Part shown: positions 7,558 through 10,471 of the stretch, in pieces
How the letters are laid out: the number at the start of each line of letters is the position of its first letter
Numbering within the stretch: position 1 is the stretch's first letter
Source: Guillardia theta CCMP2712
Lineage: Eukaryota > Protista > Cryptophyta
Length of the DNA stretch: 64,000 nucleotides
Direction of reading: 5' to 3'
Assembly: GCF_000315625.1 (NCBI RefSeq)
Contig: NW_005434665.1
Location: 679,220-743,219, forward strand
Made by a program: the position numbers and the translations under genes
Notes under the pieces: generated by a model
What the model saw: the letters and a program-made list of their open reading frames with translations, nothing else
Database searches by the model: none
Told to the model about the DNA's origin: nothing

Positions 7558-8440
7558 ATGGCAGTGGGGACGATGAGGCTGATGTTAATGGTGGCGTTTC
7601 TGGTGATGACACAAGGAGGGGCTGAGGGAAGAACAGGAGCTTGTATCCCTCTGAAGCACCCACTGCTGAGAACTGCAGGTGTTTTCTTGCCTTCGTCGGC
7701 AGGAGGACGATTGATACTCCGGGGTGGTGGGGAAGATGAGGAGGCGGAAGAGGGAGAGGAGATGGGAGAGGGCGAGGGCGAGGGCGAGGGCGAGGGCGAG
7801 GGCGAGGATGTGAGTGATGGTATCATGACTCTAGAGAAGGCAATCAAGGAGGTATGATTGAAATGTGGCAACGGAAGTATACTCAATTCTCCCTTTCAGG
7901 TTTTGCATTACGCTGACATTCACTCTGGATTGGCACGTGGCTTGAAGGAAGTATGCCAGGTAAATTGATTGTGATTGTGGCTAGGAGAAGAATATTTTTG
8001 TTTCGTGGGTTGATGCAACCTCACGTTGCTTGTTTCAGTCTCTAGAGCGAGGGGACGCTCAGTTGGTGATTCTTGCTGAAGATTGCGACAACGGTTCATG
8101 CAGGGAGGTTTTCCGATTTGCAGCTGACTATTTTCGTTCTTAGATACCTACGTCAAACTTGTGAAAGCTCTGTGCAAAGAGAAGGGCGTCTACTTGATAA
8201 AAGTACCCTCCAAGGCCGACCTAGGAAAGTGGGCAGGGCAGGTGCGGCTCGACGCAGCCGGTGATCCCAAGAAGAGCTGCAGCGCTTCATCCATTTCCAT
8301 CAAGGAATTCGGAGAACAGGTAAAAGTGCTCTTTTCTTGCTGCCTTTTCATGATAGTGAATATACCATCTTCAGTCGGAGGGGCTCTCCTTCTTGTTAGA
8401 GTACATCAAGGAAAACGCGGATACTTTAGATGCCGAGTAG
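7558..8440 (+). CDS. RPS12: 40S ribosomal protein eS12 with N-terminal signal peptide, transit-like peptide, LRGG and acidic GE linker (5 exons)
   Basis: Exons 7558-7851, 7900-7959, 8039-~8094, 8144-8319, 8375-8440, all GT-AG. Spliced product: MTLEKAIKEVLHYADIHSGLARGLKEVCQSLERGDAQLVILAEDCDNDTYVKLVKALCKEKGVYLIKVPSKADLGKWAGQVRLDAAGDPKKSCSASSISIKEFGEQSEGLSFLLEYIK, the eS12/L7Ae signature. Confidence 0.92.
7764..7806 (+). repeat. Coding (GGCGAG)n hexamer repeat encoding a Gly-Glu linker
   Basis: About 7 tandem GGCGAG-like units directly visible in exon 1 of the eS12 gene. Confidence 0.9.
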
Positions 8441-8477: not shown

Positions 8478-10301
8478 TCACAATTCATCATTGGGTATTC
8501 TGAAGCCAAATCCCAACACTCTGCGATTGCCTTCAGATAGTGATGAACAACTCTTGTCGTCGCATTCCTCTTCGCAATCTCCCTTCTCGCGCACTTTGTC
8601 CGCTTGAGCAACTATACTTCGATAAGTATCGTGCAGTCTCTCTGTGCAAGCATCCCAGTCTTCTGCGACGGTGCAACTGTCGGAATCCCAAAGAATAGTC
8701 CCTGTCTCCTGATCTTTCAGCGTCCTCGGGGATTTGCAGTATTCCTCCCCCAACAAATTGGCACAAATCTCGACAGCCGAGTCTCTCTTATCATCGATCA
8801 ACAACAATGTTTGATTGCCCGCTGTCAACTGCGATGCGCAGACCCTAACGCCGAGCTCGCTCACGCCATTCTGATGGTTGAACGTTAGTGTCATCTGATG
8901 CCCATAGTAGCGGAACCCCTCGAACAGATCGTCCATGGAGACGTACGTCGGCCTGTGTCCATGAAGGAAGGAATTAAGGTAGAAGGCTGCCATCCCGAAG
9001 TTGGAGCTGAAGGTGAAGATCAGGTAGTCACACTCTCCGAGCAGCGCGAGATCAGTATGCACATACTCCATGGGTAGAGCACCTTCCACCTTGGGCTGAG
9101 TGATGATCCGAAACTCCTTTCCGTACTCTGAGATCATCTTTGTCACGGCACTCTTCCGATCAGAACATACGAAGATTGTCCCAACACCCCCAAAGAGCTT
9201 GCGGATGCGCCTAGCCTCGTGAATGTAGTACTTGGTCGGGAAGCGCTGTGCTTCTCGGTTCTTATCCACCCCGAGCCTCATGTGGATGCCGATGATAGGA
9301 TGCTCCCATCCCATGAGCTTCTTTTGAGCTTCGATGAAGCTCCCCAACTTTGGTTTTGGCCGATGGAGGTAATGCGTCGTCTCAGTCCACCACCAGAACA
9401 GATTGGGAGGTTCAGGGAGGAGCTTCATGGCGACTTCAGGCATCTCGAAGATGCGCTCTCGATTCTCAACTCCCCAGAGATCCCCGGAGACCCGCACGTT
9501 GGATATGGAGATGTCATTCATATCCACTCCAGGCAGGGCCCGCACGCTTTCGAGGACATTGGAGGAGGATGCACACCAGGATAGCTCTTGGAGGGAGCCA
9601 AGCTCACCCCATGGAGAACCTTGATTGCTCTCTGTCAGGTTGAAGCGCCACTTCAACTCAGAGTTGACCAGGTTGTTCTCCCAGTCAGGATTCCCTACAA
9701 CGACACGCTGTGTTTGTAGACCGAGAGACATCGCTACGCGCAACCCAAGCAGCTGTGCACCGAAACCAACGATACCCCAGGGCTCCCATATCAAGAAGGG
9801 CATCGAACGACATGAAGTTTGGGGTGGATGCTGATGGTTGTAGAGCATTTCTTGCACCTTGGGAGAATATCGTGCGAAGTCCATGGAGGGATCGATGGGG
9901 AGCTCTTCGCTGCGAATCCCAACCGCTCCTTCAGGGATGGGGATGATGCTCTCAGGAGCTTGCAGCCTCGTGATCTCGAAGGCGGTGTAGTGATCAAGCA
10001 ACCCCGGCTTGCCTGTGTCATCCAACACTTGCAAAAGAAGATGATGAAGCCCTGCTGGCAGCCCTGGCACGCCAACTCTGACGTGAACTTCCCGTGTGCG
10101 CATGATTTCGTTTCCGTTGATGGCAATCAAGACCTGATACCCTGCGAAGTGACCATGTAGATTGTACTCAAAGTAGGCATCAGCATGGTCGAAGATTTCT
10201 CCCTCGTACGGCGTTAGCACCTCAAAGTGGCTCTCTGATCTTGCAAGACATGCGGCGAAGAGGATGGAGAGCGAAAGAAGGTCAGCTCTGACCTGTCCCA
10301 T
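8478..10301 (-). CDS. Alpha-1,6-fucosyltransferase-like glycosyltransferase (GT23/FUT8-like), secreted or Golgi, intronless
   Basis: Signal peptide MGQVRADLLSLSILFAACLARS. GT23 motifs GFGAQLLGL, PIIGIHMRLGVDKNREA, IFVCSD and DLALLGECDYLIFTFSSNFG. N-terminal Ig-like beta region. Confidence 0.8.
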   Translation of the reverse strand: MGQVRADLLSLSILFAACLARSESHFEVLTPYEGEIFDHADAYFEYNLHGHFAGYQVLIAINGNEIMRTREVHVRVGVPGLPAGLHHLLLQVLDDTGKPGLLDHYTAFEITRLQAPESIIPIPEGAVGIRSEELPIDPSMDFARYSPKVQEMLYNHQHPPQTSCRSMPFLIWEPWGIVGFGAQLLGLRVAMSLGLQTQRVVVGNPDWENNLVNSELKWRFNLTESNQGSPWGELGSLQELSWCASSSNVLESVRALPGVDMNDISISNVRVSGDLWGVENRERIFEMPEVAMKLLPEPPNLFWWWTETTHYLHRPKPKLGSFIEAQKKLMGWEHPIIGIHMRLGVDKNREAQRFPTKYYIHEARRIRKLFGGVGTIFVCSDRKSAVTKMISEYGKEFRIITQPKVEGALPMEYVHTDLALLGECDYLIFTFSSNFGMAAFYLNSFLHGHRPTYVSMDDLFEGFRYYGHQMTLTFNHQNGVSELGVRVCASQLTAGNQTLLLIDDKRDSAVEICANLLGEEYCKSPRTLKDQETGTILWDSDSCTVAEDWDACTERLHDTYRSIVAQADKVREKGDCEEECDDKSCSSLSEGNRRVLGFGFRIPNDEL

Positions 10302-10471
10302 GACAGGAGGAGAAGGAGGTCTGACGGAGAACAAGCTGCACAGGTGGTTGAAGTGGAGGAGGGACACCCATGAATGTTGGTGAAATCAGAGGGAGCCATA
10401 GGGGTGGGGTAGTGCCATTTGTGTCTGGACGAATGGAAATGTGACTGGGTGGCGGGATGAAACACGATGCT

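What the first reader, a model, noticed from the sequence alone, without database searches (positions are those of the whole stretch)
7558..7830. Cytosolic-type ribosomal protein eS12 with a bipartite import leader ending in a ubiquitin-tail mimic (RLILRGG)
Seen in sequence: an ~89-aa in-frame extension precedes the eS12 core. It has a hydrophobic signal peptide (MRLMLMVAFLVMTQGGAEG, plausible AEG|R cut), then a basic, acid-free 33-aa stretch ending RLILRGG (7708-7728), then an abrupt switch to an acidic GE linker. Established: ubiquitin ends LRLRGG and is cut after GG by DUBs. In algae with red complex plastids, signal + transit peptide with a non-aromatic +1 residue directs proteins to the periplastid compartment (PPC), which in cryptophytes holds nucleomorph 80S ribosomes and an ERAD/ubiquitin-derived translocon (SELMA). 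eS12 sits next to eS31, which is itself made as a ubiquitin fusion. Inference: this nucleus-encoded eS12 supplies the nucleomorph ribosome, and its leader is removed by a DUB-like peptidase recognising LRGG, i.e. a ubiquitin-mimic maturation step. I recall RGG-type cleavage motifs being noted in related algae, so novelty needs a literature check.
Basis: partly seen in the sequence, partly recalled or inferred. Interest (0 to 1): 0.85.

Follow-up and report, generated by a model that had tools for sequence, protein, structure and literature searches.

The report
Imported eS12 with ubiquitin-tail leader
In the alga Guillardia theta, a nuclear gene makes ribosomal protein eS12 for the ribosomes of the alga's leftover red-algal cytoplasm, and its import leader ends in a conserved copy of the last residues of ubiquitin (L-x-L-R-G-G), a mark shared by many other imported proteins that probably shows where the leader is cut off.

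Summary
Window 7558-8440 (+) holds a five-exon eS12 gene, and transcript contigs from three runs confirm all four introns. An 89-residue leader sits in the same exon as the start of the core. It has a hydrophobic signal peptide, then a basic, acid-free 33-residue stretch ending RLILRGG, then an acidic GE tract.

The genome is Guillardia theta CCMP2712. It also has a leaderless eS12. Published tables show no rpS12 in three cryptophyte nucleomorphs. So delivery to the periplastid compartment (PPC) is well supported.

L-x-L-R-G-[GA] plus an acidic tract is conserved in all six other leader-bearing orthologues (Hanusia, Baffinella and four unnamed), while the rest of the leader drifts.

The motif is not special to eS12:
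- 12 of 52 genomic LRGG-x-acidic sites follow an in-frame signal-like start, against a 3% base rate.
- eS7, also missing from the nucleomorph, has a nuclear copy whose leader ends in MRLRGG, directly followed by Met.

Cleavage at GG and a deubiquitinase-type enzyme remain untested inferences. I found no paper describing the motif. This scan has noted the same motif on many other pieces of this genome, and four follow-ups agree. The origin of the gene (red alga or host) is unresolved.

The parts
7558..7851 (+). Exon 1: the whole leader plus the first residues of the eS12 core, in one open frame
   Evidence: Splice donor at 7852 confirmed by transcript joints. The Baffinella orthologue has the same layout in its first exon (L101 3001-3321).
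7558..7629 (+). Signal-peptide-like N-terminus (residues 1-24; a second Met at residue 6; proposed cut after A-E-G)
   Evidence: Hydrophobic run and small -3/-1 residues read from the sequence. A hydrophobic signal-like start is kept in all seven orthologues and the A-x-G end in most. SignalP was not available.
7630..7728 (+). Transit-peptide-like stretch (residues 25-57): 5 K/R, no D/E, first residue Arg (not aromatic)
   Evidence: Composition is typical of the other leaders found in this genome.
7711..7728 (+).
   Evidence: L52, L54, R55 and G56 are invariant in 7 orthologues. The same motif lies behind signal-like starts at 11 other loci and in periplastid eS7 (L099).
7729..7818 (+). Acidic G/E/D tract (residues 58-87), probably the disordered N-terminal tail of the mature protein
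   Evidence: An acidic tract follows the motif in all orthologues. The host eS12 also starts with an acidic tail.
7764..7807 (+). Hexanucleotide repeat (GGGCGA x 7.3) encoding (GE)n
   Evidence: read laying skipped this region as a repeat.
7852..7899 (+). Intron 1 (48 nt, GT..AG)
   Evidence: Joint present in contigs of X1, X2 and X3.
7900..7959 (+). Exon 2 (eS12 core)
7960..8038 (+). Intron 2 (79 nt)
8039..8093 (+). Exon 3 (eS12 core)
8094..8143 (+). Intron 3 (50 nt)
8144..8319 (+). Exon 4 (eS12 core, L7Ae-fold region)
   Evidence: Pfam PF01248, 2.1e-9.
8320..8374 (+). Intron 4 (55 nt). Its position (GEQ|SE) is shared with the host eS12 copy and with Baffinella.
8375..8440 (+). Exon 5 with the stop codon

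Best explanation
The gene encodes the eS12 subunit of the 80S ribosomes in the periplastid compartment (PPC) of Guillardia theta. The PPC is the leftover cytoplasm of the red-algal endosymbiont, and its nucleomorph has lost rpS12.

Proposed route:
1. The signal peptide takes the precursor into the ER and is removed there.
2. The basic, acid-free, non-aromatic-start transit-peptide-like stretch carries it across the periplastid membrane through the ERAD/ubiquitin-derived SELMA machinery.
3. In the PPC the leader is cut at the conserved L-x-L-R-G-G, right after GG, by a protease that reads a ubiquitin-like tail. If ubiquitin was attached to the leader during import, the same cut would remove it.
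4. The mature protein begins with the acidic tail and joins the 40S beak.

Shown: gene structure, expression, eS12 identity, presence of host and leader-bearing paralogues, absence from nucleomorphs (literature), motif conservation, and motif recurrence in other leaders.

Inferred, with my odds:
- PPC location: about 0.9.
- The motif is a functional element: about 0.9.
- It is the cut site: about 0.6-0.65.
- The enzyme is deubiquitinase-like: about 0.35-0.4.
The stated confidence is for the whole chain.
For: Gene and expression: five exons, all introns joined in three transcript sets, leader region present in RNA-type contigs from 7551. Core is eS12.

Targeting logic:
- A leaderless paralogue lies at G000:C160 and is itself expressed (P0063).
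- rpS12 is absent from three cryptophyte nucleomorphs (PMC3879969 Table S2).
- A non-aromatic first transit-peptide residue marks PPC proteins (stated in PMC4494062).

Conservation: seven orthologues from Guillardia, Hanusia, Baffinella and four unnamed sources keep L-x-L-R-G-[GA] plus an acidic tract, while the rest of the leader diverges.

Generality:
- 12 of 52 distinct LRGG-x-[DE]3 sites in the genome have an in-frame Met plus hydrophobic start within 120 residues upstream. A scrambled GLGR control gave 0 of 20. The positional base rate is 3.0-3.4% (binomial p about 1e-7).
- Carriers include PPR, ankyrin, SAP-like and UBA-like proteins, none a typical secreted protein.

A-priori test: eS7 is also missing from the nucleomorph. 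It has two nuclear copies. One is leaderless. The other has a signal peptide plus 16 residues ending MRLRGG, followed at once by the Met at which the public model starts.

Junction: Met also follows GG directly in Baffinella eS12 and in locus L072. This fits a leader grafted onto the ancestral start codon, as in natural ubiquitin-ribosomal-protein fusions.

Context from the literature: the PPC has ubiquitin, E1/E2/E3 and a 26S proteasome. The peptidase that removes PPC leaders is unidentified ('TPLs are somehow then removed', PMC5756292). A UfSP/ZUFSP-like peptidase of unknown role is encoded in all four sequenced cryptophyte nucleomorphs (PMC6559170).
Against: - There is no direct evidence of cleavage at GG (no mature N-terminus data).
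- Most deubiquitinases need the globular ubiquitin body. The leader has no ubiquitin fold: only 33 residues, and no Pfam ubiquitin hit.
- ptDUP, the only proposed periplastid deubiquitinase, has no cryptophyte homologue, and I identified no candidate enzyme.
- Arg two or three residues before a cut also fits M16 (MPP/SPP-type) presequence peptidases.
- PPC specificity of the motif is not proven. Two carriers have an aromatic residue at the likely signal-peptide cut (L022 Phe, L060 Trp).
- The signal-peptide calls rest on a simple hydrophobicity rule, not SignalP.
- Public gene models for eS12 (P0001) and eS7_2 (P0200) start downstream of the leader.
- Extension of the mimic to R at -5 is not significant (4/12 versus 5/40, p = 0.11).
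Confidence: 0.4

Rival explanations
1. Same targeting to the PPC, and the motif is the cut site. The enzyme, however, is an ordinary presequence peptidase, such as an M16 MPP/SPP-type metalloprotease using an Arg at -2/-3, or another endopeptidase. The likeness to the ubiquitin tail is then convergent or incidental.
For: Arg at -2 or -3 from the cut is the classic rule for mitochondrial processing peptidase (established knowledge). The leader has no ubiquitin fold. ptDUP is absent from cryptophytes. One LRGG-leader protein (L060) has a weak M16_C-like region (E = 0.002, below Pfam cut-off) and could be such a peptidase.
Against: M16 sites are loose. They do not normally give an invariant L-x-L-R-G-G across genera or exact RLRGG in unrelated proteins. 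No M16 enzyme is shown to be in the PPC.
Confidence: 0.22
2. The motif is not a cut site. It is a recognition or retention element: a ubiquitin-tail look-alike bound by the SELMA/Cdc48-Ufd1-Npl4 or ubiquitin-conjugating machinery, or, together with the acidic tract, a stop signal that keeps the protein in the PPC. The leader is removed elsewhere or not at all.
For: Import across the periplastid membrane depends on ubiquitin machinery. In chlorarachniophytes the acidic C-terminal part of the leader is reported to decide PPC retention (my recollection of Hirakawa et al. 2010, not checked here). An acidic tract follows the motif in every eS12 orthologue.
Against: The motif sits exactly at the boundary between the leader and the region homologous to leaderless paralogues, with the ancestral Met directly after GG in eS7, Baffinella eS12 and L072. 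eS7 has no acidic tract after the motif. Ubiquitin-binding domains recognise the Ile44 patch rather than the tail (established knowledge).
Confidence: 0.2
3. The leader is not translated. Translation starts at an internal Met (M69 or M90), as in the public ORF P0001, so this is simply a second cytosolic eS12 and the upstream frame is a chance 5' UTR feature.
For: The public ORF calls for eS12 (P0001, 127 aa) and eS7_2 (P0200, annotated 'cytoplasmic type') begin after the leader. No single G. theta contig bridges the GE repeat.
Against: The leader frame is open, starts 7 nt or less from the transcript contig ends and is conserved as protein in six other sequences, including complete transcript ORFs and the Baffinella genome. 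The synonymous codons of LRGG differ between loci. A true host cytosolic copy exists.
Confidence: 0.04

Closest known systems
Bipartite topogenic signals of cryptophyte periplastid proteins (signal peptide plus transit-peptide-like region without an aromatic first residue; Gould et al. 2006, as cited in PMC4494062)
   Same: A signal peptide followed by a basic, acid-poor stretch whose first residue is not aromatic. The cargo is a cytosolic-type protein needed in the PPC.
   Different: A conserved L-x-L-R-G-G at the end of the leader is not part of the published description. I found no paper mentioning it. The leader peptidase is still called unknown (PMC5756292).
Natural ubiquitin-ribosomal protein fusions (Ub-eS31/RPS27A, Ub-eL40), cut after LRLRGG by deubiquitinases
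   Same: A ribosomal protein preceded by a removable N-terminal piece ending in (R)LRGG, with the mature protein starting at the next residue.
   Different: There is no ubiquitin fold here: only about 33 residues and no Pfam ubiquitin hit. The piece is a secretory/import leader, and cleavage is not demonstrated.
LXGG-specific papain-like proteases (coronavirus PLpro and similar), which also deubiquitinate
   Same: A precedent that a linear L-x-G-G site without a ubiquitin body can be cut by an enzyme with a deubiquitinase fold (established knowledge).
   Different: Those are viral polyprotein processing enzymes. No such enzyme is identified in cryptophytes.
PEXEL (RxLxE/Q/D, plasmepsin V) and oomycete RxLR-dEER host-targeting leaders
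   Same: The architecture: signal peptide, short spacer, a short Arg/Leu motif, then acidic residues. In PEXEL the motif is a cleavage site.
   Different: The leader has no RxLxE/Q/D or RxLR match (checked on the sequence). The destination compartment differs, and those motifs are cut in the ER by an aspartic protease.
Mitochondrial/stromal M16 presequence peptidases (Arg -2/-3 rule)
   Same: A basic presequence with Arg shortly before the mature N-terminus.
   Different: The strict L-x-L-R-G-G conservation is much tighter than M16 site preferences. No PPC M16 enzyme is known.

Membership tests
Ribosomal protein eS12 (Pfam PF01248 L7Ae/L30e/S12e fold) | Sequence match to eS12 over the whole core | tested here: met
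   PF01248 on exon 4, E = 2.1e-9. PDB eS12 chains of 80S ribosomes match at 1e-30 to 1e-20 over residues 3-119 of the 127-residue core.
Ribosomal protein eS12 (Pfam PF01248 L7Ae/L30e/S12e fold) | Incorporation into a 40S subunit | not testable with these tools
   Needs purification of PPC ribosomes or cryo-EM.
Cryptophyte PPC-type bipartite leader | N-terminal ER signal peptide | tested here: inconclusive
   An 11-residue hydrophobic core and A-E-G at -3/-1. A hydrophobic signal-like start is kept in all seven orthologues and the A-x-G end in most. No SignalP or ASAFind run was possible.
Cryptophyte PPC-type bipartite leader | Transit-peptide-like stretch: basic, acid-poor, first residue not aromatic and not Leu | tested here: met
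   Residues 25-57 have 5 K/R and 0 D/E. The first residue is Arg if the cut is after AEG. The rule is as stated in PMC4494062.
Cryptophyte PPC-type bipartite leader | Cargo needed in the PPC and not encoded by the nucleomorph, with a separate host cytosolic copy present | tested here: met
   rpS12 is absent from three cryptophyte nucleomorphs. A leaderless paralogue lies at G000:C160.
Cryptophyte PPC-type bipartite leader | Experimental localisation in the PPC | not testable with these tools
   Needs GFP fusion or immuno-EM.
Ubiquitin / ubiquitin-like modifiers | Beta-grasp ubiquitin fold | tested here: not met
   Only 33 residues lie between the signal peptide and GG. No Pfam ubiquitin hit on exon 1 at E <= 0.1.
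Ubiquitin / ubiquitin-like modifiers | C-terminal L-R-G-G tail | tested here: met
   LILRGG here. MRLRGG, IRLRGG and QRLRGG occur in other leaders. Compare ubiquitin LRLRGG and NEDD8 LALRGG (established knowledge).
Deubiquitinase substrates | Hydrolysis of the peptide bond directly after GG by a deubiquitinase-fold enzyme | not testable with these tools
   No proteomic N-termini and no candidate enzyme sequence in hand. Complex prediction was not run for that reason.
PEXEL / RxLR host-targeting motifs | RxLxE/Q/D or RxLR within the leader | tested here: not met
   No match in residues 1-62 of the model (sequence, checked by eye).

The most novel reading that the evidence does not exclude
Cryptophytes remove the import leader of periplastid proteins with a deubiquitinase-type protease that recognises a six-residue ubiquitin-tail mimic (L-x-L-R-G-G) at the leader/mature junction. 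One cut would then strip both the leader and any ubiquitin attached to it during SELMA transport. That would explain how imported proteins escape the periplastid 26S proteasome even though cryptophytes lack ptDUP. It would be a presequence-processing principle not known from any other organelle.
Probability: 0.33. Interest if true: 0.9.

Novelty: new variant of a known kind. Interest (0 to 1): 0.72.

Why it matters
How leaders of periplastid proteins are removed, and what ubiquitin does after ERAD-derived (SELMA) import, are open questions. Reviews say the leaders are 'somehow removed' and call the lack of a cryptophyte ptDUP a conundrum (PMC5756292, PMC12412216).

A short, invariant ubiquitin-tail motif at the exact leader/mature boundary turns these questions into simple experiments: N-terminal proteomics, GG-to-AA mutants and inhibitor profiles.

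The ribosomal proteins eS12 and eS7 are the cleanest anchors for the motif's destination. An 80S ribosomal protein behind a signal peptide can only be useful in the PPC.

Practically, the finding shows that public G. theta models are truncated at the Met after the leader (eS7_2 is annotated 'cytoplasmic type'). Published PPC proteome predictions therefore probably miss such proteins. LRGG could also serve as a predictor of the mature N-terminus.

Tried and rejected
- Raw genome counts of the DNA pattern for LRGG-x-acidic were not above the reversed-pattern control (76 versus 66). They were about three times a scrambled-order pattern (26). The signal lies in what is upstream, not in the raw count.
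- Extension of the mimic to Arg at -5 was not significant (p = 0.11).
- Origin by phylogeny: a 133-row tree puts the leader-bearing clade (support 100) apart from the host copy and next to a clade containing land plants. The AU test does not reject host copy and PPC clade as one group (p = 0.79; the constrained tree even scored better). Red-algal versus host origin is unresolved, and no named red-algal eS12 was available.
- Metagenome scan for more orthologues: the alignment was too variable, and a single-protein scan found nothing.
- Metagenomic gene calls in the PPC clade (P0153-P0160, P0197) are exon fragments without the leader exon.
- Curtis et al. 2012 and Stork et al. 2012 are not held in the library.
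- Literature searches for LRGG, RGG or RLRGG together with cryptophyte or periplastid terms found nothing.
- PEXEL/RxLR and RGG-box readings were rejected on sequence.

Full report
1. WHAT IS THERE

The window belongs to a genome of 87.1 Mb in 669 contigs. A protein encoded on contig C99 of the same assembly is filed at NCBI under Guillardia theta CCMP2712, so this is the nuclear genome of that cryptophyte.

At 7558-8440 on the + strand I built a five-exon gene of 216 codons: exons 7558-7851, 7900-7959, 8039-8093, 8144-8319 and 8375-8440. An in-frame stop lies 13 codons upstream of the ATG.

Exon 4 matches Pfam PF01248 at 2e-9. The 127-residue core is identical to a public transcript ORF, P0001. 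It matches eS12 chains of solved 80S ribosomes at E = 1e-30 to 1e-20 over almost its whole length.

All four GT..AG introns are spliced out in transcript-type contigs of three independent runs. Contigs cover the leader-coding part from 7551 (X2) or 7563 (X1) to 7722, and nothing is laid upstream of 7551. The reads tool skipped the GE repeat (7723-7817), so no single G. theta contig bridges leader and core. In the genome they are one open exon. The same holds in the Baffinella frigidus genome (L101 3001-3321) and in complete transcript ORFs of other cryptophytes.

2. THE OBSERVATION

- Residues 1-24 have a hydrophobic core and A-E-G before the proposed cut.
- Residues 25-57 have five K/R and no acid, and end in RLILRGG (7708-7728).
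- Residues 58-87 are an acidic G/E tract, partly a (GGGCGA)x7 repeat.
- The eS12 fold begins near M90.

3. WHERE THE PROTEIN GOES

- A second eS12 gene lies on contig C160 (46% identity over exon 4). It has no leader and starts with a short acidic tail. Its transcript is in MMETSP (P0063). It shares the intron position GEQ|SE with the window's gene.
- Table S2 of Maier et al. 2013 lists the ribosomal proteins encoded by nucleomorphs. rpS12 is absent from Guillardia theta, Hemiselmis andersenii and Cryptomonas paramecium.
- An 80S ribosomal protein that enters the ER can only be of use in the periplastid compartment (PPC), where nucleomorph mRNAs are translated.
- The first residue after the likely signal-peptide cut is Arg. 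A non-aromatic start is the published mark of PPC rather than stromal proteins (PMC4494062).
I put PPC targeting at about 0.9.

4. THE MOTIF IS CONSERVED

A search with exon 4 against 1.8 billion representatives, plus two word-based searches, returned six further leader-bearing orthologues: Hanusia phi (P0002), Baffinella frigidus (P0006, KAJ1484829.1) and a close relative of it (P0163), an MMETSP transcript (P0161), and two unnamed sequences (P0003, P0162).

In their alignment (A1) the only invariant leader positions besides Met1 are R51, L52, L54, R55 and G56, followed by G or A and then an acidic tract. The rest of the leader varies in sequence and length. That pattern indicates selection on a short linear motif.

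5. THE MOTIF IS GENERAL, NOT AN eS12 SPECIALITY

I scanned the genome for DNA that can encode L-R/S-G-G-x-[DE]3 and read 72 of the 76 hits.
- Of 52 distinct true LRGG sites, 12 (including this gene) have an in-frame Met followed by a hydrophobic, uncharged stretch within 120 residues upstream.
- A scrambled-order control (G-L-G-R-x-acidic) gave 0 of 20.
- The rate for random in-frame positions in the same ~290 kb of fetched DNA is 3.0-3.4%. The binomial p is about 1e-7, or below 1e-4 with my stricter manual count of nine.
- The leaders are basic and acid-poor.
- Recognisable domains in the carriers are PPR repeats, ankyrin repeats, and weak SAP, UBA-like and M16_C-like matches. All are intracellular types.
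- Codons for LRGG differ among loci, so the signal is at the protein level.

I then made a prediction: another ribosomal protein missing from the nucleomorph should show the same leader. eS7 has two nuclear copies. The C85 copy is leaderless. The C99 copy reads: signal peptide, 16 residues ending H-M-R-L-R-G-G, then Met and the eS7 core.

The NCBI model for that gene (P0200, 'S7e_2, cytoplasmic type') starts exactly at that Met. Met also follows GG directly in Baffinella eS12 and in locus L072. The motif therefore sits at the seam between an added leader and the ancestral N-terminus.

6. MECHANISM

Shown: a conserved six-residue element, identical or nearly so to the C-terminus of ubiquitin (LRLRGG) or NEDD8 (LALRGG), at the end of import leaders.

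Context from the literature:
- Transport across the periplastid membrane uses an ERAD-derived, ubiquitin-dependent machine.
- G. theta imports a nucleus-encoded ubiquitin with a bipartite leader (PMC12412216).
- The peptidase that removes PPC leaders is unidentified (PMC5756292).
- ptDUP is absent from cryptophytes, which reviewers call a conundrum given their periplastid 26S proteasome.
- A UfSP/ZUFSP-like peptidase of unknown role is encoded in all four sequenced cryptophyte nucleomorphs (PMC6559170).

Inference: the leader is cut after GG by an enzyme that reads a ubiquitin-like tail. If ubiquitin is attached to the leader during import, one cut would remove both.

Against: most deubiquitinases need the ubiquitin body, no enzyme is identified, and no mature N-terminus is known.

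Rivals:
- An M16-type presequence peptidase using Arg at -2/-3.
- A recognition or retention signal rather than a cut site.
- An untranslated leader (unlikely).

7. ORIGIN

A tree of 133 eS12 sequences recovers the leader-bearing clade with full support, away from the host copy and beside a group containing land plants. The AU test does not reject a single cryptophyte clade of host and PPC copies (p = 0.79). Whether the gene came from the red alga or is a retargeted host duplicate is open.

8. NOVELTY AND PRIOR NOTES

PPC-targeted ribosomal proteins are expected from the published model (PMC3879969). The conserved ubiquitin-tail end of the leader is not in any paper I could search.

I found the genome-wide pattern before consulting the scan's notes. 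Those notes show the same theme recorded on many other windows of this genome: 52 notes mention LRGG, and four follow-ups reach the same reading.

What this window adds:
- The ribosomal-protein argument that ties the motif to the PPC.
- The fulfilled eS7 prediction.
- The seam-at-the-ancestral-Met observation.
- The finding that public gene models are truncated at that point.

Noticed in passing
window 8478-10367 (-): A 629-residue open frame with an alpha-1,6-fucosyltransferase (FUT8 N/catalytic) domain (Pfam E = 5e-12) and a signal-anchor-like start. It converges on the eS12 gene. Transcript contigs run from the eS12 3' end straight into it, so the 3' ends of the two genes abut or overlap.
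   Followed up: partly
L099 (G000:C99:99200-100500, - strand): The public NCBI model 'S7e_2, cytoplasmic type' (P0200) starts at the Met right after an unannotated in-frame signal peptide plus ...HMRLRGG leader. The label 'cytoplasmic type' hides a likely periplastid protein. The protein also has a C-terminal extension of about 75 residues compared with typical eS7.
   Followed up: partly
L060 (G000:C119:103131-106153, +): A 611-residue open frame with a signal-like start, a leader ending VLIRLRGG and a weak Peptidase_M16_C-like region (E = 0.002, below cut-off). It has Trp at the likely signal-peptide cut. It is a possible organellar processing peptidase carrying the motif itself.
   Followed up: partly
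L079, L084, L089-L091, L093, L094, L097 and others: A dispersed repeat, at least 9 near-identical copies on different contigs, that encodes ...GLGRGEEERDSSPNDDQEGMGML.... It is probably a mobile element and surfaced only through the scrambled control pattern.
   Followed up: no
G000:C136:82906, 85774, 97478, 100362 (- strand); L063: Four identical copies of an LRGGKDDD-encoding site within 18 kb, spaced about 2.9 kb and about 11.7 kb apart. This looks like a local segmental duplication of a gene without a recognisable signal peptide in the same frame.
   Followed up: no
G000:C8:1063032-1063172 and G000:C36:57298-57684: Only one clear nuclear copy each of eS30 and of eukaryotic-type uS13 was detected, although both are missing from the G. 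theta nucleomorph. Either the second copies are intron-rich and were missed, or the PPC shares or lacks these proteins.
   Followed up: no
L028 (G000:C30:442024-445046, -): A PPR-repeat protein (Pfam PPR_2, 1e-22) behind a signal peptide and a 73-residue leader ending in LRGG plus an acidic tract. It is a candidate RNA-binding factor for nucleomorph or plastid transcripts.
   Followed up: partly
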